A stretch of DNA of 64,000 bases from IMG/VR virus record IMGVR_UViG_3300049048_000052, positions 62,001 through 126,000 of that record. One strand, written 5' to 3'. Positions 3,598 through 59,237 of the stretch are shown piece after piece. A model generated the notes under the pieces. That model was not told the DNA's origin. It saw nothing but the letters and a program-made list of their open reading frames with translations, and did no database searches. The position numbers and the translations under genes were made by a program. The stretch's first letter is position 1. Each line of letters begins with the position of its first letter.

Positions 3598-4328
3598 TGA
3601 ATGAGAAAGTAGTATTTGAATCCGCAGGCGGTTGGCTCCAAGTAATAGAGACAGCTAACAAGTTCTACTTTGCCCGTCGTAAGGGTAAGGACTCTGTTGC
3701 TGTGTTCTTAGTACGCCAGGGTAATGAGGGATGGGAAGTCCTTATTAGACGCCAACCCCTACCCCTACTTAATAGGGATACTGGTGATGATATGGAGTTA
3801 TACTCATGTCCTATTACAGGTGGGTATGAGTTAAACGAGTCTGCTGAAACATGCGCCCTACGTGAGGCATATGAGGAAGCAGGATATAAGCTGGATAAAC
3901 TTAGTTATCTTGGTGGTTACATCGTAGGTACCCAGACTGATGAGTATGTTGATATGTTCTGGGCTGACGTAACTAATGTTGAGCCTAGCATTCCTACTCA
4001 GGATGGTACTGTATTCGAGGCTGCCAGTGAGAATAAGTGGATGCCCATAGGTTTCCTGGATATGGACGGATCCTATGCTGCCCTGCAGATTGGGTTCCTT
4101 AGATTAAAAGAGGACCTGGCCCTGACCGAGGTAGAGAATATAGATTGGATGCCCCTAGCTATCAGATTATTAAACACCTGTATAGGTGATGTCTGTATAG
4201 AGGATCGCATACGTACCTATGACCTCATAGGTAAGCTAAGGTCTAAACTAGGTGAGGAATCCTTCGGTAGGTTATTAGGTACTAGATATTTAGAGCTATC
4301 CAATAAGATAGCGGAGGCCCTAGGTTAA
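3597..4328 (+). CDS. Nudix hydrolase
   Basis: Nudix box GGYELNESAETCALREAYEEAG. Confidence 0.9.
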   Translation: MNEKVVFESAGGWLQVIETANKFYFARRKGKDSVAVFLVRQGNEGWEVLIRRQPLPLLNRDTGDDMELYSCPITGGYELNESAETCALREAYEEAGYKLDKLSYLGGYIVGTQTDEYVDMFWADVTNVEPSIPTQDGTVFEAASENKWMPIGFLDMDGSYAALQIGFLRLKEDLALTEVENIDWMPLAIRLLNTCIGDVCIEDRIRTYDLIGKLRSKLGEESFGRLLGTRYLELSNKIAEALG

Positions 4329-18498: not shown

Positions 18499-19269
18499 AT
18501 GATCGAGAATAGCGATGCCGCGCTGGCAGTTGACCTGATCCGTAGAGTCCTTACTATAGGAGTGGGTCTTACGCCTCTAGACTACATAACATCTTTGGAT
18601 GAAGATAGTATGAGGAGTCTAGAGAGATACTTCTCATCTCTTAATGAGGGAGAGTATCTCTACTTCCTTCGCACCTTCGCCGAAATAGATAGTAGAATGT
18701 ATATCAATCTCATACCCTTGTTTAGGGAGTTGTATGATATGAGATATACAACTAAGAGAGGTAGTGTGGCATTAGTTCCCTTGAGGGACTTTGTCATATC
18801 CATGAAGGAGGCCGTATGGCGTCCTCATGTTGAGATCTTCTTCCCCGGCTCTGGAGATGTGTTAAACCAGATAAGCAGTGTCCTGGTTAGTAAAAGAGAG
18901 GTCCTTATTGCTTGGTTAGATGAATACATAACTAAGCATGACCTTATGTCCATAATTAATAGAGAGGAGTACACAAGTGTACGAGAGGCGACTAGATTCT
19001 TAACACCGCTCAATAGGTGCTTACTCATTGAGCGCTTAGCAACTAAGGTATTACCTAGGCAGGTTGGTGGTATTGTCCTAGCACTATACGATATTAGTAA
19101 AGAAAGTCCTGACTATAAAGGGCTCCTCTACTACATCGTTGATGCAATGAATAGAGGAGCCCTTCCCTTGAGGGATTTCTTTATTTCAGATAAGCATACT
19201 ATAGAGGTCAAACCTCATGCCCAGGTCATACTTTGGCAACCAAAAGCTTTGGACTCTGATCTAAACTAG
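18499..19269 (+). CDS. hypothetical helical protein
   Basis: ORF track 256 aa. Confidence 0.7.
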   Translation: MIENSDAALAVDLIRRVLTIGVGLTPLDYITSLDEDSMRSLERYFSSLNEGEYLYFLRTFAEIDSRMYINLIPLFRELYDMRYTTKRGSVALVPLRDFVISMKEAVWRPHVEIFFPGSGDVLNQISSVLVSKREVLIAWLDEYITKHDLMSIINREEYTSVREATRFLTPLNRCLLIERLATKVLPRQVGGIVLALYDISKESPDYKGLLYYIVDAMNRGALPLRDFFISDKHTIEVKPHAQVILWQPKALDSDLN

Positions 19270-20251
19270 TTGGAATAGCTAGTTTAGGGAATATGTCCTT
19301 GATGAATTTAAAGTGCCCAGCAGGATTAGTCTGATTCAATATGGACCTTTGTATTCTCTCTATTAGTTTGAATACATTCATATAGGAAACGGCTAGGTTA
19401 TAGCGGATCATCCTTTTAGCTGATTCTTCTATACCATTAGGACTAATAAAGACTAGTCTTACTTTCTTGCCTCTGTATTTCTTCTTTGCTAGGTCGAGAT
19501 ACCCCCTCTCACCTAAGATTTCCTTTATATGATCGGCAGTTACTACGTCCCTCTTGAGTTCGTAGATGATCACCTCCTTCTTACCTCTACGTTCTACAAG
19601 ATCAAATCTTCTAGTCTTAGAGGTTTTGTCCAGCGTATTAATCAGGGTCTCTTCCTGTGTCAGTTTGATACGGGTGGAGTAAGTTGATAGTAGTGCTATC
19701 CTAGTCTGAATCTCTTCCTCACTTAAGTAGGTTAGTGATTCGACTGGGGTAGTTAGTACTATCGGATTAATAGCCTCAGCACCTAATAAGGTGAAATCTG
19801 TGGCCGCATCCGATCTACCTCTAGTTAAGTACCAATAGGCAATAGGCCATTCACATATATATAACTCAGGCGCCCTACCAAGATCACCACCAATATAGTG
19901 TTTCCATAAGTCCTTAAATGTCCTTAGCTCTTGGGTTTTCAGCTTCATGACAAAGGGTCTCTTACCTGTAGACTCCTGGAACTGAGCACTGATGGTTACC
20001 TTATTACTTGCCCAGTTATTAGAGAAGTCTCTACTATCTACTCCCTTAGCCGTGGCTAGTTGATTAGATACAAAGAAGGCACCCTTACCAGGACCCCCTG
20101 GTATCCAATTAATATTGTACTTCTTACATAGATTAGATAACTTCTTAATGATTAGAGGATCAGCCTTAGGCGTATCCATCATAATGGCCTCCTCTAATGA
20201 GGGTCTCTTGGATAACTTATTACTGTTATTAGGGTCGAAGTATCTATCCAT
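19226..20251 (-). CDS. putative DNA-binding domain fused to PD-(D/E)XK nuclease
   Basis: EEEIQ..RFDLVE..IIYELK matches E..D..(E)xK; N-terminal region Bro/KilA-like (weak). Confidence 0.55.
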   Translation of the reverse strand: MDRYFDPNNSNKLSKRPSLEEAIMMDTPKADPLIIKKLSNLCKKYNINWIPGGPGKGAFFVSNQLATAKGVDSRDFSNNWASNKVTISAQFQESTGKRPFVMKLKTQELRTFKDLWKHYIGGDLGRAPELYICEWPIAYWYLTRGRSDAATDFTLLGAEAINPIVLTTPVESLTYLSEEEIQTRIALLSTYSTRIKLTQEETLINTLDKTSKTRRFDLVERRGKKEVIIYELKRDVVTADHIKEILGERGYLDLAKKKYRGKKVRLVFISPNGIEESAKRMIRYNLAVSYMNVFKLIERIQRSILNQTNPAGHFKFIKDIFPKLAIPTSLDQSPKLLVAKV

Positions 20252-20331: not shown

Positions 20332-20421
20332 TGGGATGTAGCTGGTAATTGGTAACCACACAAACTGTTAATTTGTACCCCTAAACATGGGGCCCTGGAG
20401 GTTCGAGTCCTCCCATCCCAG
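20332..20421 (+). tRNA. trnN: tRNA-Asn(GUU) with long variable arm
   Basis: acceptor TGGGATG/CATCCCA, G73, U1:A72; ACAAA-CTGTTAA-TTTGT; variable stem CCCC-TAAACAT-GGGG; T arm GGAGG-TTCGAGT-CCTCC; no CCA. Confidence 0.85.
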
Positions 20422-21840: not shown

Positions 21841-22893
21841 TTGTCTTACCTAAGTGTAAAGACAGTGCGTAAATTAGCAAGTATACAGAAGATTGTAAGT
21901 GTAGAAGCCATTGAGGGTAAAGATAGAATAGTACAGTGTGGGGTCCTTGGCTGGTCAATGGTTACTCAGAAGTCTAATAACTTCCAAGTGGGTGACTACT
22001 GTGTGTTCTTTGAGATAGATAGTATATTACCTGAGGCAGAGTGGTCAGCCTTCTTAGAAGGTAAGACTAGGATCAGGACTAGGAAGTTTGGTGGTGTATT
22101 AGCACAAGGTCTCATGTTACCCATCGATGCTATACCTGAGGTAGAGTCACATCTACGTCAAGTGGATGGGGATATCGAAGGTCTAGATCTAACAGAGCTA
22201 TTAGGTGTAATACAATGGGAGCCTCCTGTTGATGCTAATACTGGTGAGAGTAGAGGTAACTTCCCTACCCATATCATTAGTAAGACCGATGAGATCAGGA
22301 TACAGAGTTGTCCTAAGGTCTTAGAGGAATTGAAGGGACTACCTTGGTATGCTGCCCTTAAGATGGATGGCTCCAGTGCTACCTACTTCTGGGATGATGC
22401 CCCGCCTAAGATGGATATGTCCCCAGGCTTTGTCAGTTGCTCACGTAATATGAGAAAGAGTGAGGACTCTCATTTCCATCAGGTTGCGCTGAGGTATGGA
22501 CTAGATGAGATATTGAAGACCAATGATTACCTAGTATTCCAGGGTGAGGTAGTAGGTCCAGGTATTCAAGCTAATAGGTTAGGACTTAAAGAGTTAGACC
22601 TATTCATATTTAACGTATATGACAGAAGGGAGAAGAGATACTTAACCCTATCTGAGGCTCTGCAAGTATGTAAGTTTGGTAAGCTCAAGCATGTACCCAT
22701 TATCGATCAAGGGGAGTCCTTTGATCTAACTCAGGAGGCATTAGTCCAAATGAGTATAGGTGAATATGAGGGCACTAAGAATCCTAGAGAGGGTATCGTA
22801 GTGCGCCCTCAGACTCCCGTCTATAGTAATGTATTGAGGGACAGACTGTCCTTCAAAGTAGTTAATCCTAATTATCTGTTGAAGTATGAATAG
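21841..22893 (+). CDS. ATP-dependent RNA ligase (Rnl2/DRB0094-like) with N-terminal OB-like domain
   Basis: motif I KMDGSS, FQGEVVGPGIQ, motif IV EGIVVR, motif V FKVVNPNYLLK; start probably GTG at ~21866. Confidence 0.9.
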   Translation: MSYLSVKTVRKLASIQKIVSVEAIEGKDRIVQCGVLGWSMVTQKSNNFQVGDYCVFFEIDSILPEAEWSAFLEGKTRIRTRKFGGVLAQGLMLPIDAIPEVESHLRQVDGDIEGLDLTELLGVIQWEPPVDANTGESRGNFPTHIISKTDEIRIQSCPKVLEELKGLPWYAALKMDGSSATYFWDDAPPKMDMSPGFVSCSRNMRKSEDSHFHQVALRYGLDEILKTNDYLVFQGEVVGPGIQANRLGLKELDLFIFNVYDRREKRYLTLSEALQVCKFGKLKHVPIIDQGESFDLTQEALVQMSIGEYEGTKNPREGIVVRPQTPVYSNVLRDRLSFKVVNPNYLLKYE

Positions 22894-36683: not shown

Positions 36684-37472
36684 ATGGATCTGGCAGTCAG
36701 GATCAAGGAATTCTATGAGTATGCATACCGCACCTTCCTACCCAGGAGGATGCCAGTCATACTTAGAGTAGATGGTAAGGCATTCCACTCTTATACAAGG
36801 GGTATGAATAGACCCTTTGATGAGAGATTGGAAGAAGTAATGAACCTTGTAGCTATTAAGCTATGTAAGGAAATACAAGGTGCTCAGATAGCCTATGTGC
36901 AATCTGATGAGATCAGTATATTAATTCATGGTTATAAGAAGCTCAATAGTGAGTCATGGTTTGGTAATAATGTACAGAAGATGACCAGTGTTAGTGCTGG
37001 TATAGCTAGTGCATGGTTTACCTACCACTCATCTAGGTTAACTACTGTATCTGAGGATATAGGTAATACCCAACAGTTTATAGAATCTAAGCTAAAGCCA
37101 GCAGTATTTGACTCTAGGGTATTCGTACTCCCTGAATCAGAGGTATGTAACTACTTCATATGGAGACAGCAGGATGCTACTCGCAATAGTATCTCTATGC
37201 TTGCCCAGTCTTTATACTCCCATAAGGAGTTAAATGGGGTTACATGTAATCAGATGCAGGAGCTCTGTTTCCAGAAGGGTCATAACTGGAATGATCTACC
37301 TATCATTAGAAAGAGGGGTAGATGTATTCGTAAGTTTATTAGGTATACACCTGTAGCTGGAAGACCTGAGGGTAATACAGTTGCTAGATCCTATTGGGAT
37401 GTAGACTATGAGACTCCTATCTTTACTGAGAATCGTAACTATATTGAAGATCTATTAAAGACATATGAGTAG
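36684..37472 (+). CDS. thg1: tRNA(His) guanylyltransferase Thg1/TLP
   Basis: RVDGKAFH, YVQSDEIS, FDSRV, NYF.WRQ.DA.RNSI. Confidence 0.93.
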   Translation: MDLAVRIKEFYEYAYRTFLPRRMPVILRVDGKAFHSYTRGMNRPFDERLEEVMNLVAIKLCKEIQGAQIAYVQSDEISILIHGYKKLNSESWFGNNVQKMTSVSAGIASAWFTYHSSRLTTVSEDIGNTQQFIESKLKPAVFDSRVFVLPESEVCNYFIWRQQDATRNSISMLAQSLYSHKELNGVTCNQMQELCFQKGHNWNDLPIIRKRGRCIRKFIRYTPVAGRPEGNTVARSYWDVDYETPIFTENRNYIEDLLKTYE

Positions 37473-41981: not shown

Positions 41982-42146
41982 GCCTGGTATGCACTAAGGT
42001 AGTGCGATTAGACCACATATGTTTGGGCTCATAGTTCAATGGATAGAATGATTCCCTCCTAAGGATTAGATCTAGGTTCGATTCCTAGTGGGCCTGCTTT
42101 TTATATGGTGGTTTAGTTATAGTGGGTTCGATTCCCACACCAGGCG
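41982..42146 (+). ncRNA. outer tRNA shell enclosing tRNA-Arg(CCU)
   Basis: acceptor GCCTGGT/ACCAGGC plus G; D arm GCAC-TAAGGTA-GTGC; extended stem ATTAGACCAC-ATAT/ATAT-G-GTGGTTTAGT; T arm GTGGG-TTCGATT-CCCAC. Confidence 0.8.
42025..42096 (+). tRNA. trnR: tRNA-Arg(CCU)
   Basis: GGGCTCA/TGGGCCT plus G; D loop AATGGATA (A20); loop CT-CCT-AA; T arm CTAGG-TTCGATT-CCTAG. Confidence 0.88.
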
Positions 42147-50117: not shown

Positions 50118-50396
50118 ATGAAACCAGGACCTAAGAAGGGTAGTAGTCAGAGTAAATCCCATGTTGCCAAGAGGGCCAAGGCTGTAAAAGGTAAGGCCAA
50201 TGGTATGTTTAAGGATGGAAGACGTTCCTATCGTTCCATAGCGGGAGCTAGGAATAGCGATGGAAAAGTTGTGCATCACAAGGACGGTGATAGGACCAAT
50301 AATTCAAGATCTAATCTAAAGGTCCTGAATGATGGTCCTAGTAGGCCAGGTAGGAAGACAACTAGTAAGCATGAAAGACTTACTAGACGTAAGTAG
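50118..50396 (+). CDS. small HNH endonuclease-like protein
   Basis: VVHHKDGDRTNNSRSNLKVL. Confidence 0.75.
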   Translation: MKPGPKKGSSQSKSHVAKRAKAVKGKANGMFKDGRRSYRSIAGARNSDGKVVHHKDGDRTNNSRSNLKVLNDGPSRPGRKTTSKHERLTRRK

Positions 50397-50567
50397 CCAG
50401 TGTAGCTTAAAAGGTAAAGCGTACCCCTCTCAGGGTATACCGAAAGGGTCCATAGGTAATAGGTGTAGTTGCAAGATTCTGTGAGAGTTATAAACTCCGT
50501 ATTCGGCAGAGTCCCAGACTGCACAACTATACCTATGGATATGAGGGTTCGATCCCCTTCACTGGCG
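50396..50567 (+). ncRNA. 172-nt tRNA-like RNA with a giant variable-region domain
   Basis: GCCAGTG/CACTGGC plus G; D arm GCTT-AAAAGGTA-AAGC; TACCC-CTCTCA-GGGTA; inserted helices TCCATAGGTA/TACCTATGGA, GTGTAGT/ACTGCAC, GATTCTG/CAGAGTC; T arm GAGGG-TTCGATC-CCCTT. Confidence 0.78.
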
Positions 50568-58429: not shown

Positions 58430-58489
58430 ATCTTAGGGCGTAAGCCCTTATTCATTCCTCAGTGGCGCAGTGGATAGCGCACCCGCCTT

Positions 58490-59179
58490 TAGGATAGGAG
58501 CACTTCTAGGGGAAACCCTTAAAGTGAATGTGGTTAAATTCAGGGAAGACTAAGTAGATTATGATCAAACTCCCAATGACAGTTAGGACATAGAGGTACT
58601 AAGTTGTCTACAGAGTTAATGTCGTTAACTAAGGTTTCATGTGGAAAACTAGAGATGGCCTTTCTATGGGCTATTTCAACATGTTTGTTATACCCACAGT
58701 TAATACAACAAGACCAGTCGAGTTTTGCTGCTACAGCTCTAGCCCTTGCTCTAACTAAAGCATAGGCTGAGGACCTGTGATGTTTATTGTACATGGCTTC
58801 TTCTAAAGTGACATTTAGATTTAGTCCCTTACGATGAGATCCAAAGCAGGATTTACAGTAGGTTCTGGAGTTACTTATAGGAGTGGTGCATACCAAGCAT
58901 TTATTCTCGGGTTTCCTCTTGGGGAAATTACGATTATTATGTGTAGCAGCACAACTCTTACTACAGAACTTAGGGTTAGTTGTTTCCTTATTACAGTTGA
59001 GACAATTCATAGTTTATATGTTAATCCTGAGCCAAGCTATTCGAAAGCCCTATTATATCATGGGTTCGAATAGAAGGTGCAGAGACTTAACAGCCACCAC
59101 CTAAGGTCATAAGACTATGGTGAAGATAAAGTCCAGACTACAAACACTCTTGAGTGGCAGCTAAAGCTGTAGTAGGAGG
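58490..59179 (+). mobile_element. group I intron (tRNA-Leu(UAA)-intron-like) inserted after U34
   Basis: P AAATTCAGGGAA 58536, Q AATCCTGAGC 59023, R GTGCAGAGACT 59077, S AAGATAAAGTCC 59123; P1 CTT/GAG, P10 TAG/CTA; terminal G59179. Confidence 0.88.
58540..59010 (-). CDS. intron-encoded HNH homing endonuclease (antisense)
   Basis: Cys-rich Zn fingers; CINCG..VEIAH..N...NLVPLCPNCH.EFD. Confidence 0.85.
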   Translation of the reverse strand: MNCLNCNKETTNPKFCSKSCAATHNNRNFPKRKPENKCLVCTTPISNSRTYCKSCFGSHRKGLNLNVTLEEAMYNKHHRSSAYALVRARARAVAAKLDWSCCINCGYNKHVEIAHRKAISSFPHETLVNDINSVDNLVPLCPNCHWEFDHNLLSLP

Positions 59180-59237
59180 CTAAGCGGTCGGTCGCAGGTT
59201 CGAATCCTGCCTGGGGAGTTTTAGTTAGGAGAAGATC

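What the first reader, a model, noticed from the sequence alone, without database searches (positions are those of the whole stretch)
58456..59218. tRNA-Arg(UCU) split at U34 by a Leu(UAA)-type group I intron with an antisense HNH gene in P5
Seen: P, Q, R and S elements and the 5' segment (CTT^TAGGATAGGAGC...AAATTCAGGGAA) parallel the cyanobacterial tRNA-Leu(UAA) intron. P1 (CTT/GAG) and P10 (TAG 58495-97 with exon CTA) fix the splice sites and give the anticodon UCU; D-loop A20 agrees with Arg. A 156-aa HNH ORF lies between P and Q on the opposite strand, and its TGA stop overlaps the P element. Established: bacterial tRNA group I introns are known in Leu(UAA), fMet, Ile(CAU) and Arg(CCU). 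An Arg(UCU) host in a phage with an antisense homing gene is not one I know. Inference: antisense transcription of the HNH gene could suppress splicing.
Basis: partly seen in the sequence, partly recalled or inferred. Interest (0 to 1): 0.78.

Follow-up and report, generated by a model that had tools for sequence, protein, structure and literature searches.

The report
Phage tRNA-Arg intron carrying backwards HNH gene
A giant-phage tRNA-Arg(UCU) gene is split by a well-formed self-splicing group I intron with an intact HNH nuclease gene on the opposite strand, and that nuclease's closest relatives are stand-alone genes parked beside tRNA-Arg(UCU) genes in other phages, so it looks like a nuclease caught moving into an intron.

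Summary
Window 58456-59218 is a 73-nt tRNA-Arg(UCU) gene interrupted after U34 by a 690-nt group I intron (Rfam RF00028, 54.1 bits against a threshold of 50). A 156-aa HNH gene lies antisense in the P5 loop, and its TGA stop lies in the P4 strand.

All helices P1-P10 form. They are in register with 53 related tRNA introns from viral contigs, with abundant covariation. The guide base that pairs with exon nucleotide 35 is G in the Arg introns and U in the Leu introns, which fixes the anticodon as UCU rather than GCU.

The novelty claim is only partly right.
- Arg(UCU) is not a new host. It is reported in Beggiatoa and Thiomargarita, and I found the same intron lineage in at least 10 bacterial genomes and 7 other viral contigs.
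- The architecture is not unique. The same HNH family sits antisense in P5 of bacterial tRNA-Arg(CCU) introns.
- The phage setting does appear new. A 2014 review states that no phage intron was known in a tRNA gene.
- The evolutionary series is also new. The window's HNH is sister to a free-standing gene abutting an intron-less trnR(UCU). Two other close relatives flank intron-containing trnR(UCU) genes.

Splicing and cleavage are untested.

The parts
58456..58489 (+). tRNA-Arg(UCU) 5' exon: acceptor 5' strand, D arm (GGAUA loop with A20), anticodon stem 5' strand, and C32 U33 U34
   Evidence: Sequence. ARAGORN on the spliced sequence. Stem pairs counted.
58490..59179 (+). Group I (IC3-type) intron, 690 nt, ending in omega-G at 59179
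   Evidence: Rfam RF00028, 54.1 bits. Helices in register with a 54-sequence alignment. Invariant joiners are kept.
58495..58500 (+). Internal guide sequence: UAG (P10, pairs with exon CUA at 59180-59182) followed by GAG (P1, pairs with exon CUU at 58487-58489, with a U.G wobble at the splice site)
   Evidence: P1 is C-G/U-A/U.G in 54 of 54 sequences. At column 58497-59180 the pair is G-C in the 3 Arg introns, U-A in 45 (Leu) introns, and C-G or G-U in the 5 remaining paired sequences.
58501..58526 (+). P2 hairpin with GAAA tetraloop
   Evidence: covarying pairs. (L2 is GAAA in 51 of 54).
58530..58535 (+). P3 5' strand (pairs with 59092-59097)
   Evidence: 6 pairs, all canonical in 54 of 54, with several pair types per column.
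58540..58545 (+). P4 5' strand, the 'P' element (pairs with 59025-59030). It contains the antisense stop codon of the HNH gene.
   Evidence: Pair 58542-59028 is A-U here and G-C in the 53 others.
58548..58564 (+). P5 5' strand (58548-50, pairs with 59020-22) and P5a 5' strand (58558-64, pairs with 59007-13). The 7-bp P5a stem closes the loop that holds the ORF.
   Evidence: The same stretch encodes the last HNH codons on the other strand.
58540..59010 (-). HNH endonuclease gene, 156 aa, filling the P5 loop on the antisense strand
   Evidence: All family motifs are conserved. 572 relatives at E <= 1e-10. The source annotation called only 118 aa, but the N-terminal zinc-ribbon motifs support the 156-aa start.
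59007..59033 (+). P5a and P5 3' strands, P4 3' strand (the 'Q' element AAUCCUGAGCC), and the start of P6
59031..59078 (+). P6 (59031-33 with 59076-78) and the long P6a hairpin (59037-59073)
59079..59097 (+). R element: J6/7, P7 5' strand (59082, 59084-88, with bulged A59083), J7/3, and P3 3' strand (59092-97)
   Evidence: P7 pairs are invariant and the bulged A is present in 54 of 54.
59098..59122 (+). P8 hairpin
   Evidence: covariation in 4 or more pairs.
59123..59134 (+). S element: J8/7 AAGAUA and the P7 3' strand
59138..59175 (+). P9 three-way junction: P9 (CUAC/GUAG), P9a (CUUG loop) and P9b (UAAA loop)
   Evidence: U-A here against C-G in 42 others at 59139-59174. (the L9 loop is UAAA here and a GNRA tetraloop (GAAA or GUAA) in 52 of 54).
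59180..59218 (+). tRNA-Arg(UCU) 3' exon: C35 U36 A37 A38, anticodon stem 3' strand, 5-nt variable loop, T arm, acceptor 3' strand, and discriminator G. No CCA is encoded.

Best explanation
This is a composite mobile group I intron in a tRNA gene of a jumbo phage (contig IMGVR_UViG_3300049048_000052, 251.8 kb).

Proposed mechanism:
1. The pre-tRNA is transcribed on the + strand.
2. The IC3 ribozyme folds. P1 pairs exon CUU with guide GAG, placing a U.G wobble at U34.
3. An external guanosine attacks after U34. P10 (guide UAG with exon CUA) aligns the 3' exon, and omega-G 59179 is released.
4. The ligated product is tRNA-Arg(UCU). It reads AGA, and possibly AGG by wobble. These are the commonest Arg codons of this phage.
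5. The P5 loop carries, on the opposite strand, an intact HNH endonuclease gene with its own expression signals.

This HNH belongs to a family that normally lives as a free-standing gene inside phage tRNA arrays, most often directly beside trnR(UCU). I infer that it cuts or nicks HNH-less or intron-less trnR(UCU) alleles of co-infecting relatives. Recombinational repair would then copy the intron plus the HNH gene into them.

The window would then be the end point of the route 'free-standing nuclease plus ORF-less intron at one site gives a mobile intron'.

Shown: the anatomy, conservation, covariation, the relationships of intron and nuclease, and codon demand. Inferred: splicing activity, nuclease target and homing.
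For: Intron identity and integrity:
- Rfam hit above the gathering score.
- Every helix P1-P10 is canonical in the window, and covariation is strong across the 54-sequence alignment.
- Invariant J3/4 AAA, J4/5 AA, the P7 bulged A and omega-G are all kept.

Splice site: the guide base opposite exon nucleotide 35 covaries with the tRNA host. A GCU (Ser) reading would need a long variable arm, and this tRNA has 5 nt.

Demand for the tRNA: AGA is 36% and AGG 41% of Arg codons in 44 long ORFs. The window holds no other tRNA-Arg(UCU).

HNH integrity: all conserved Cys, His and Asn motifs of the family are present.

HNH ancestry:
- Arg(TCT) lies within 150 nt of the gene in 21 of 67 viral loci, although it is only 7.3% of all tRNAs in those loci.
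- The window's copy is sister (100/94) to a free-standing gene abutting an antisense intron-less trnR(UCU), within a clade mostly next to tRNAs with a UCU anticodon.
- Two further close relatives (62% and 60% identity) flank intron-containing trnR(UCU) genes.

Intron ancestry: the 12 Arg(UCU) introns from phages and bacteria fall on one side of a branch.

The conceptual route is described in PMC3984707 (collaborative homing and endonuclease-gene invasion).
Against: - There is no experimental or transcript evidence for splicing or cleavage.
- No intron-less allele was found in a close relative of this phage. The best whole-tRNA identity among 120 uninterrupted matches is 60 of 73, with no shared flanking genes.
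- The L9 loop is UAAA where 52 of 54 relatives have a GNRA tetraloop. J6/7 is GCA where 53 of 54 have GUA. tRNA pair 27-43 is a C.U mismatch. Any of these might lower activity.
- No promoter could be assigned for the HNH gene, and its Shine-Dalgarno-like AGGA lies 14 nt upstream of the ATG.
- The free-standing relatives may target DNA beside the tRNA rather than the anticodon region. If so, the intron is only a safe harbour.
Confidence: 0.68

Rival explanations
1. Safe-harbour passenger. The intron splices, but the HNH is a free-standing-type nuclease whose target lies outside the intron insertion site, for example flanking tRNA-array DNA as with T4 SegB. It merely sits in a tolerant loop, so the intron itself is not mobilised as a unit by cleavage at its own insertion site.
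For: - Relatives are free-standing in both orientations and beside several tRNAs, including Ile(UAU), Met(CAU), Leu(UAA) and Lys.
- FelixO1-like phages carry distant relatives next to tRNA-Ile.
- The geometry relative to the tRNA differs between the window and its sister L346.
Against: - The clade containing the window's copy is tied specifically to UCU-anticodon tRNAs.
- The same family occupies the same P5 loop of bacterial tRNA-Arg(CCU) introns that lie outside any tRNA array. That pattern fits a nuclease tied to tRNA-Arg genes themselves.
Confidence: 0.2
2. Decaying relic. The intron no longer splices efficiently, because the 450-nt insert in P5 and the lost L9 GNRA loop impair it. On this reading the gene is a tRNA pseudogene kept only as a vehicle for the nuclease.
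For: - The L9 loop is UAAA and J6/7 is GCA, both unique in the 54-sequence alignment.
- There is a C.U mismatch at tRNA pair 27-43.
- The Rfam score is only 4 bits above threshold.
Against: - All core helices are intact, including a two-sided change in P4 (A-U against G-C) that keeps the pairing.
- A 7-bp P5a stem closes off the insert.
- AGA and AGG dominate Arg codons, and no other Arg(UCU) tRNA is in the window.
- The bacterial Arg(CCU) introns carry full-length HNH genes of the same family in P5, inside what appear to be single-copy chromosomal tRNA genes.
Confidence: 0.08
3. Transcription of the HNH gene produces RNA complementary to the ribozyme core (P4-P5 at its 3' end, and P5'-P9 if its promoter lies beyond the intron). 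This would time or throttle splicing and so the supply of tRNA-Arg(UCU).
For: - The ORF's last codons and stop overlap P4 and P5.
- Any promoter must lie at or beyond 59011 on the - strand, so the 5' UTR is antisense to Q, P6 and possibly more.
- The antisense layout recurs in several independent tRNA introns: L096, L116, L135, L189, L241 and L350-L357.
Against: - No promoter was identified.
- Sense-strand ORFs also occur in related tRNA introns: L282 with a 137-aa sense-strand ORF (family not scanned), L346 with PDDEXK_5, and L347 with LAGLIDADG. The antisense layout is therefore not required.
- A simpler reading is that the antisense placement keeps ribosomes off the ribozyme.
Confidence: 0.15
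4. The junction is shifted by one base (58488/59179), which would give anticodon GCU (Ser), as ARAGORN's intron mode proposes.
For: ARAGORN run with its intron option (-i) reports tRNA-Ser(gct) i(35,690).
Against: - ARAGORN knows nothing of group I splicing rules.
- P1 would shrink to 2 bp.
- The guide G58497 pairs with exon C59180 only in the UCU register, and this column covaries with the host tRNA in 54 sequences.
- The 5-nt variable loop and the GGAUA D loop are typical of Arg, not bacterial Ser.
Confidence: 0.02

Closest known systems
[quoted passage not shown]
   Same: - Same insertion point after U34, with the same P1 (CUU/GAG).
- Same P, Q, R and S core, GAAA L2 loop, and overall IC3 fold.
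- 45 of the 53 comparison introns I aligned to the window are Leu(UAA) introns of this type.
   Different: - The host tRNA is Arg(UCU), and the P10 guide base is changed to match C35.
- In a tree the intron groups with an Arg(UCU)-specific lineage, not with Leu introns.
- It carries an ORF. As far as I recall, the classical Leu introns have none.
tRNA-Arg(UCU) group I introns of Beggiatoa 'BOGUAY' and Thiomargarita (MacGregor 2013, cited in PMC4853749), plus the bacterial copies found here (Aeromonas veronii L330, Marinomonas L284, Enterovibrio L270, Bacillus L265, Halothiobacillus L341, Arenicellales, Caldilineales L282, Fibrisoma limi L241)
   Same: - Same host tRNA.
- In the copies I recovered, the same U34^C35 site, the same UAG-GAG type guide and a similar three-way P9.
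- Fibrisoma also has an antisense HNH-like ORF in P5.
   Different: - These are mostly ORF-less, at 205-320 nt.
- Caldilineales carries a sense-strand 137-aa ORF.
- The Fibrisoma ORF is not detectably of the window's HNH family.
- The window's copy is in a phage.
- I could not read the MacGregor paper itself.
Bacterial tRNA-Arg(CCU) introns with antisense HNH, found here in metagenome contigs L350-L357. They share host tRNA and insertion site with the Agrobacterium tRNA-Arg(CCU) and Azoarcus tRNA-Ile introns (this comparison is from memory).
   Same: The same HNH family (39-47% identity over the full length), in the same P5 loop, in the same antisense orientation, with the stop next to or within P5/P4.
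   Different: - The intron is inserted after U36, not U34.
- P9 is a simple Azoarcus-like helix.
- The setting is a bacterial chromosome (SdhA, XylB, TrmJ neighbours).
- These HNH genes form a separate clade, and a single clade with the window's copy is rejected (AU p = 0.021).
Synechocystis tRNA-fMet intron encoding I-Ssp6803I (Bonocora & Shub 2001, cited in PMC3984707)
   Same: [quoted passage not shown]
   Different: That enzyme is a PD-(D/E)XK nuclease encoded on the sense strand, in a cellular genome and a different tRNA.
Collaborative homing: free-standing F-CphI plus the psbA intron of cyanophages (Zeng, Bonocora & Shub 2009). Also free-standing nucleases in phage tRNA clusters (T4 SegB; HNH genes of FelixO1-like phages).
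   Same: - A free-standing nuclease family and an ORF-less intron converge on one conserved gene.
- I see all three stages: HNH beside intron-less trnR(UCU), HNH beside intron-containing trnR(UCU), and HNH inside the intron.
   Different: - The target here is a tRNA gene rather than a protein gene.
- The merged stage is actually observed here.
- No cleavage data exist for this family.
Microcoleus phage My-WqHQDG (GenBank OR578706.1), annotated 286-nt 'tRNA-Arg'
   Same: A deposited phage genome whose tRNA-Arg is split by a group I intron.
   Different: It is Arg(CCU) split after U36. It has no ORF in the intron, and the neighbouring CDS is unrelated to the window's HNH.

Membership tests
Group I intron (Rfam RF00028), subgroup IC3-like tRNA introns | Covariance-model score at or above the curated gathering score | tested here: met
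   54.1 bits against 50, with the full model 1-253 matched.
Group I intron (Rfam RF00028), subgroup IC3-like tRNA introns | P1 helix formed by the 5' exon end and an internal guide, with a U.G wobble at the 5' splice site | tested here: met
   C-G, U-A and U.G at 58487-89 with 58500-498. Identical in 54 of 54 relatives.
Group I intron (Rfam RF00028), subgroup IC3-like tRNA introns | Terminal omega-G, and P10 pairing of the guide with the 3' exon | tested here: met
   G59179 is present (G in 54 of 54). P10 is 3 bp, and its first pair covaries with exon nucleotide 35.
Group I intron (Rfam RF00028), subgroup IC3-like tRNA introns | Conserved core: P3-P8 pseudoknot, P4-P6 domain, P7 with bulged nucleotide (G-binding site), J3/4, J4/5, J8/7 | tested here: met
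   All pairs are canonical in the window. Covariation is present in P2, P3, P8 and P9. The joiners are conserved. The exceptions are J6/7 GCA and L9 UAAA.
Group I intron (Rfam RF00028), subgroup IC3-like tRNA introns | Self-splicing with guanosine cofactor | not testable with these tools
   Needs an in vitro transcript or RNA from an infection.
tRNA-Arg(UCU) | Cloverleaf with a 7-nt anticodon loop reading UCU after intron removal | tested here: met
   ARAGORN gives tRNA-Arg(tct) for the 58489/59180 junction. The acceptor, anticodon and T stems pair, apart from the 27-43 C.U mismatch.
tRNA-Arg(UCU) | Arginine identity elements (A20, C35, U36 or G36; established for E. coli ArgRS) | tested here: met
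   The D loop AGUGGAUA places A at position 20, and C35 and U36 come from the 3' exon. Actual charging was not tested.
HNH endonuclease (Pfam PF13391 HNH_2 / PF01844) | HNH domain above the curated threshold, with conserved His/Asn/His and zinc-binding Cys | tested here: met
   HNH_2 scores 28.9 bits against 21. The motif CxxCGYxKHxExxH...N...N..LCPNCHWEFDH is conserved across 56 family members, including the window's copy.
Homing endonuclease of a mobile intron | Cleaves the intron-less allele at or near the intron insertion site | not testable with these tools
   Only indirect support: the family is tied to trnR(UCU) and trnR(CCU) loci.
Homing endonuclease of a mobile intron | Presence/absence polymorphism of intron plus nuclease gene among close relatives | tested here: inconclusive
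   ORF-less Arg(UCU) introns, nuclease remnants (L355, L359, L360, L362) and many uninterrupted trnR(UCU) genes exist. No close relative of this phage was recovered.
Cyanobacterial tRNA-Leu(UAA) intron family | Resides in tRNA-Leu(UAA) between U34 and A35 | tested here: not met
   The host is tRNA-Arg(UCU) and exon nucleotide 35 is C. The intron groups with other Arg(UCU) introns. It works like the Leu intron but is not a member of it.

The most novel reading that the evidence does not exclude
This would be the first recognised mobile group I intron in a bacteriophage tRNA gene. On this reading, a family of tRNA-Arg anticodon-region HNH homing endonucleases has repeatedly switched between free-standing life in phage tRNA arrays and life inside tRNA-Arg introns. 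The window captures the merged stage, with the two preceding stages preserved in its nearest relatives. It would also be the visible tip of a large unreported population of group I introns in phage tRNA genes: at least 120 viral contigs, in Leu UAA, Leu UAG, Arg UCU, Lys UUU, Thr UGU, Ser UGA and Met/Ile CAU tRNAs.
Probability: 0.45. Interest if true: 0.72.

Novelty: new variant of a known kind. Interest (0 to 1): 0.6.

Why it matters
Textbook accounts say that phage group I introns sit in protein-coding genes, despite the many tRNA genes phages carry (PMC3984707). Here a jumbo phage has one in a tRNA that reads its commonest arginine codons, and searches from it uncovered well over a hundred more tRNA introns in viral contigs.

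The case also supplies a natural three-step series for how a mobile intron is assembled from a free-standing nuclease and an ORF-less ribozyme:
- nuclease beside an intron-less gene,
- nuclease beside an intron-containing gene,
- nuclease inside the intron.

That model has previously rested on two phage protein-gene examples. It also gives a compact, testable system: a 690-nt intron, a 156-aa nuclease and a 73-nt target gene.

If the nuclease does recognise the tRNA-Arg anticodon region, it is a new specificity class with many natural variants. Splicing may also gate the supply of a tRNA the phage needs, which links selfish-element biology to phage translation.

Tried and rejected
- blastn of the 901-nt region against GenBank phages found nothing. 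Sequence-level relatives were only found through motif scans and nhmmer.
- A simple regex scan for the P, Q, R and S elements in the HNH loci was too noisy to use.
- ARAGORN's intron mode shifts junctions by 1-4 nt and mislabels anticodons (Ser GCU for Arg UCU, Phe for Leu). I corrected this with the rule that the exon ends in U and the intron ends in G, followed by re-splicing.
- The 22-nt pattern for the Arg-type 3' junction gave mostly chance hits in genome contigs. I kept only those confirmed by nhmmer.
- I tested whether other ORF-bearing tRNA introns (L080, L084, L096, L116, L135, L158, L189, L241, L282) hold the window's HNH family. They do not. They carry other HNH types, an unassigned 137-aa sense-strand ORF (L282), or nothing recognisable.
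- I tested whether the window's HNH and the bacterial intron-borne HNHs form one clade. This was rejected (AU p = 0.021).
- The sigma-70 promoter scan and an alignment of the upstream regions of the window's two minus-strand genes gave nothing usable.
- I looked for an intron-less allele in a close relative of this phage and found none.
- I considered that the CUAAG in P5 next to the insertion might mimic the exon CUAAG and have served as an ectopic target, as in the Loizos model. P5 CCUAAG is conserved in ORF-less IC3 introns anyway, so the 5-nt match carries no weight.
Full report
**What is there**

The window is part of IMG/VR contig IMGVR_UViG_3300049048_000052, which is 251,780 bp. Nearly all of its genes are on the + strand. 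They include tail-fibre, RIIB-like, RNA ligase and Thg1-like genes and several tRNAs, with no close relative among GenBank phages.

At 58456-59218 the sequence reads as a tRNA gene in two pieces. The 5' exon is 58456-58489 and the 3' exon is 59180-59218, separated by 690 nt.

Rfam's group I intron model matches 58479-59155 at 54.1 bits (threshold 50). The whole model is aligned, with one long insertion in the P5 loop. Joining 58489 to 59180 gives a 73-nt cloverleaf that ARAGORN calls tRNA-Arg(TCT). CCA is not encoded.

The only long ORF in the insertion lies on the minus strand (58540-59010, 156 aa). It is an HNH endonuclease: Pfam HNH_2 at 28.9 bits against 21, and PHROG 1271. Every factual statement in the finding checks out, including P1, P10, the stop codon inside the P element and the Arg-type D loop.

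**Is the ribozyme sound, and where does it splice?**

I collected relatives by scanning viral contigs for the R-element motif. nhmmer with the window's 3' intron half matched essentially all 120 loci returned. After correcting ARAGORN's junctions with the group I rule (exon ends in U, intron ends in G), most were tRNA-Leu(UAA) introns after U34. There were also Arg(UCU), Lys(UUU), Thr(UGU), Ser(UGA) and Leu(UAG) after U34, and Met/Ile(CAU) after U36.

I aligned 53 distinct U34-type pre-tRNAs with the window, with its ORF cut out, and counted each helix.
- In the window, P1, P2, P3, P4, P5, P6/P6a, P7, P8, P9/P9a/P9b and P10 are all made of standard pairs.
- The family shows many compensatory changes in P2, P3, P8, P9 and P9b.
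- P1 is invariant at C-G, U-A, U.G.
- The guide base opposite exon nucleotide 35 is G (pairing with C) in the three Arg introns. It is U (pairing with A) in 45 sequences (Leu), and C-G or G-U in the five remaining paired sequences.

This covariation fixes the junction at U34^C35 and the anticodon as UCU. The alternative GCU register loses P1 and P10 pairing and is inconsistent with the 5-nt variable loop.

J3/4 AAA, J4/5 AA, the bulged A in P7 and omega-G are kept. A 7-bp stem (58558-64 with 59007-13) closes the loop that holds the ORF.

Four deviations deserve mention:
- L9 is UAAA where 52 of 54 relatives have a GNRA tetraloop.
- J6/7 is GCA where 53 of 54 have GUA.
- The tRNA 27-43 pair is a C.U mismatch.
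- One P4 pair is A-U where 53 others have G-C. This is a two-sided change, and the A supplies the antisense TGA stop of the HNH gene.

**Does the phage need this tRNA?**

In 44 long ORFs of the window, AGA and AGG make up 36% and 41% of arginine codons. The window has a tRNA-Arg(CCU) at 42025 but no other tRNA-Arg(UCU). This argues that the split gene must yield a working tRNA. The other 188 kb of the genome were not available to me.

**The nuclease and its relatives**

The HNH protein has 67 relatives (29-57% identity) in viral contigs and 572 at E <= 1e-10 in the large protein collection, the best at 62%. The window's copy keeps all conserved zinc-ribbon and HNH motifs.

Almost all viral relatives are free-standing genes inside phage tRNA arrays. 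The tRNA that abuts them is tRNA-Arg(UCU) in 21 of 67 loci, although it is only 7.3% of the tRNAs in those loci. Among the closest relatives it is the rule.

In a maximum-likelihood tree the window's HNH is sister (UFboot 100, SH-aLRT 94) to P0003/L346. That is a free-standing gene whose stop abuts an antisense, intron-less trnR(UCU).

Two other close relatives are more telling:
- P0002/L345 (62% identity) lies 45 nt downstream of a trnR(UCU) that is itself split after U34 by an intron of this family.
- P0012/L347 (60% identity) abuts a trnR(UCU) whose 681-nt intron carries a LAGLIDADG gene.

So the three stages of the collaborative-homing or gene-invasion route described in PMC3984707 are all present around one tRNA gene: nuclease beside an intron-less gene, nuclease beside an intron-containing gene, and nuclease inside the intron.

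In GenBank phages the family appears as free-standing HNH genes next to tRNAs in FelixO1-like phages, in Erwinia phage Ep030 (50% identity) and in some Synechococcus phages.

**How unusual is it?**

Arg(UCU) as a host is not new. Flood et al. (PMC4853749) state that MacGregor et al. [quoted passage not shown]

A scan for the Arg-type 3' junction, filtered by nhmmer, recovered U34^C35 Arg(UCU) introns from two sources:
- Viral contigs L114, L124, L190, L202, L212, L214 and L215.
- Bacterial genomes of Aeromonas veronii, Halothiobacillus, Marinomonas lutimaris, Enterovibrio nigricans, Bacillus sp. 491mf, three Arenicellales, a Caldilineales and Fibrisoma limi.

In an intron tree, 12 of these ORF-less or ORF-trimmed Arg(UCU) introns, the window's included, fall on one side of a branch. 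Support is weak for exactly that set (SH-aLRT 59) and strong if one Leu intron is added (98). The window's intron is therefore a member of an established Arg(UCU) lineage, not a fresh jump from Leu.

The antisense-HNH-in-P5 layout is not unique either. A pattern joining the P4 motif to the antisense HWEFDH codons found 13 metagenome contigs. In these, tRNA-Arg(CCU) (Arg(UCU) in one case) is split after U36 by an Azoarcus-like intron.
- Seven contigs carry a full-length HNH of the same family (39-47% identity), antisense in P5.
- Several others retain only a C-terminal remnant of the gene (clearest in L355, L359, L360 and L362).
- The two larger contigs whose genes I scanned (L350, L351) are bacterial chromosome fragments (SdhA, XylB, TrmJ).

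These HNH genes form their own clade. Forcing them together with the window's copy is rejected (AU p = 0.021). So either the family entered P5 of tRNA-Arg introns at least twice, or it moves in and out.

Fibrisoma limi's chromosomal Arg(UCU) intron also has an antisense HNH-like ORF in P5, from a family I could not link to this one. Antisense HNH ORFs of yet other families sit downstream of the Q element, presumably in the P6 loop, of phage tRNA-Leu introns.

What I could not find anywhere else is this HNH inside an intron in a viral contig. The only viral hit to the pattern is the window itself.

I also found no paper describing a group I intron in a phage tRNA gene. The 2014 review says explicitly that all phage introns then known are in protein-coding genes. 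One GenBank phage record (Microcoleus phage My-WqHQDG, OR578706.1) silently annotates a 286-nt tRNA-Arg. This is an Arg(CCU) gene split after U36.

**How it most likely works**

Shown by sequence and comparison:
- A complete IC3 ribozyme with a guide sequence matched to both exons.
- An intact nuclease gene in a peripheral loop.
- A tRNA that the phage's codon usage calls for.

Inferred:
- The precursor self-splices to give tRNA-Arg(UCU).
- The nuclease, expressed from its own minus-strand signals, cuts or nicks trnR(UCU) alleles that lack it, in co-infecting relatives.
- Repair then copies the intron and nuclease gene across.

The antisense placement may simply keep ribosomes off the folding ribozyme.

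The main alternative is that the nuclease targets flanking DNA and uses the intron only as a safe harbour. A decayed, non-splicing relic is unlikely given the intact helices and the codon demand.

**Verdict**

The claim of a new host tRNA is superseded.

What remains of value is the phage setting and the link between an intron-borne nuclease and its free-standing relatives at the same tRNA gene. There is also the wider, apparently unreported abundance of group I introns in phage tRNA genes. I rate it a new variant of a known kind, with interest 0.6. Nothing about activity has been tested.

Noticed in passing
window 50396-50567 (+): Rfam calls a tRNA (38.7 bits) that is 172 nt long. It has an acceptor stem, D arm, an irregular anticodon arm (6-nt loop UCUCAG in the fold) and a T arm, plus a roughly 95-nt perfect-looking extra hairpin where the variable arm should be. 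RNAfold gives -71 kcal/mol, z = -6.8. ARAGORN does not call it. I do not know what it is.
   Followed up: partly
L004:2864-2939(-), L012 and L017:2872-2946(-), L016:2862-2936(-), L026 and L027:2921-2997(-), L024:2886-2965(-): Beside free-standing HNH relatives lie odd tRNA-like genes. Each has an acceptor stem that covaries between contigs, then immediately an anticodon arm with loop CU-UCU-AA, then a small hairpin carrying a D-loop-like AAUUGGAU, then a normal T arm. The D arm and the anticodon arm appear to have swapped order. The layout is conserved in at least 7 contigs.
   Followed up: partly
L070-L189 (viral contigs), e.g. L110, L168, L048, L066 (Lys UUU); L125, L173 (Thr UGU); L122 (Ser UGA); L096 (Leu UAG); L044, L080, L108, L138, L143, L152, L162 (Met/Ile CAU): Group I introns are common in tRNA genes of IMG/VR viral contigs. 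They occur in many different tRNAs, with the P10 guide changing to match each exon. Some contigs carry two or three split tRNAs (L124, L202, L212). I did not check how many of these contigs are true phages rather than host fragments.
   Followed up: partly
L096, L116, L135, L189 (antisense, about 152 aa); L084, L158 (sense); L282 (137-aa ORF, sense); L346 605-1000 (PDDEXK_5 in a tRNA-Leu intron); L347 2108-2557 (LAGLIDADG in a tRNA-Arg(UCU) intron): tRNA introns in viral, metagenomic and bacterial contigs (L282 is a Caldilineales genome contig) carry at least three endonuclease families, on either strand and in different loops. This suggests repeated independent invasions.
   Followed up: partly
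L044:3560-3769(-) with the tmRNA at 3786-4199(-): An Azoarcus-like intron splits a tRNA(CAU) that lies directly after a phage-encoded tmRNA. A free-standing HNH of the window's family abuts it on the other strand.
   Followed up: no
window 21841-22893 and 36684-37472: The phage encodes an RNA ligase (Pfam RNA_ligase plus the PHA02142 OB fold) and a Thg1-like tRNA-His guanylyltransferase. Together these suggest investment in tRNA repair or maturation.
   Followed up: no
window 19226-20251 (-) next to tRNA-Asn 20332-20421: This is the only other sizeable minus-strand ORF in the window (341 aa; phrog_37791, unknown function; no Pfam hit). It lies just before a 90-nt tRNA-Asn. A mobile-element role was not examined.
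   Followed up: no
window 58540-59010 (-): The source's own gene call for the HNH is 118 aa (P0001, an internal start). Family alignment shows that the conserved N-terminal zinc ribbon begins at the ATG at 59010, so 156 aa is the better model.
   Followed up: yes
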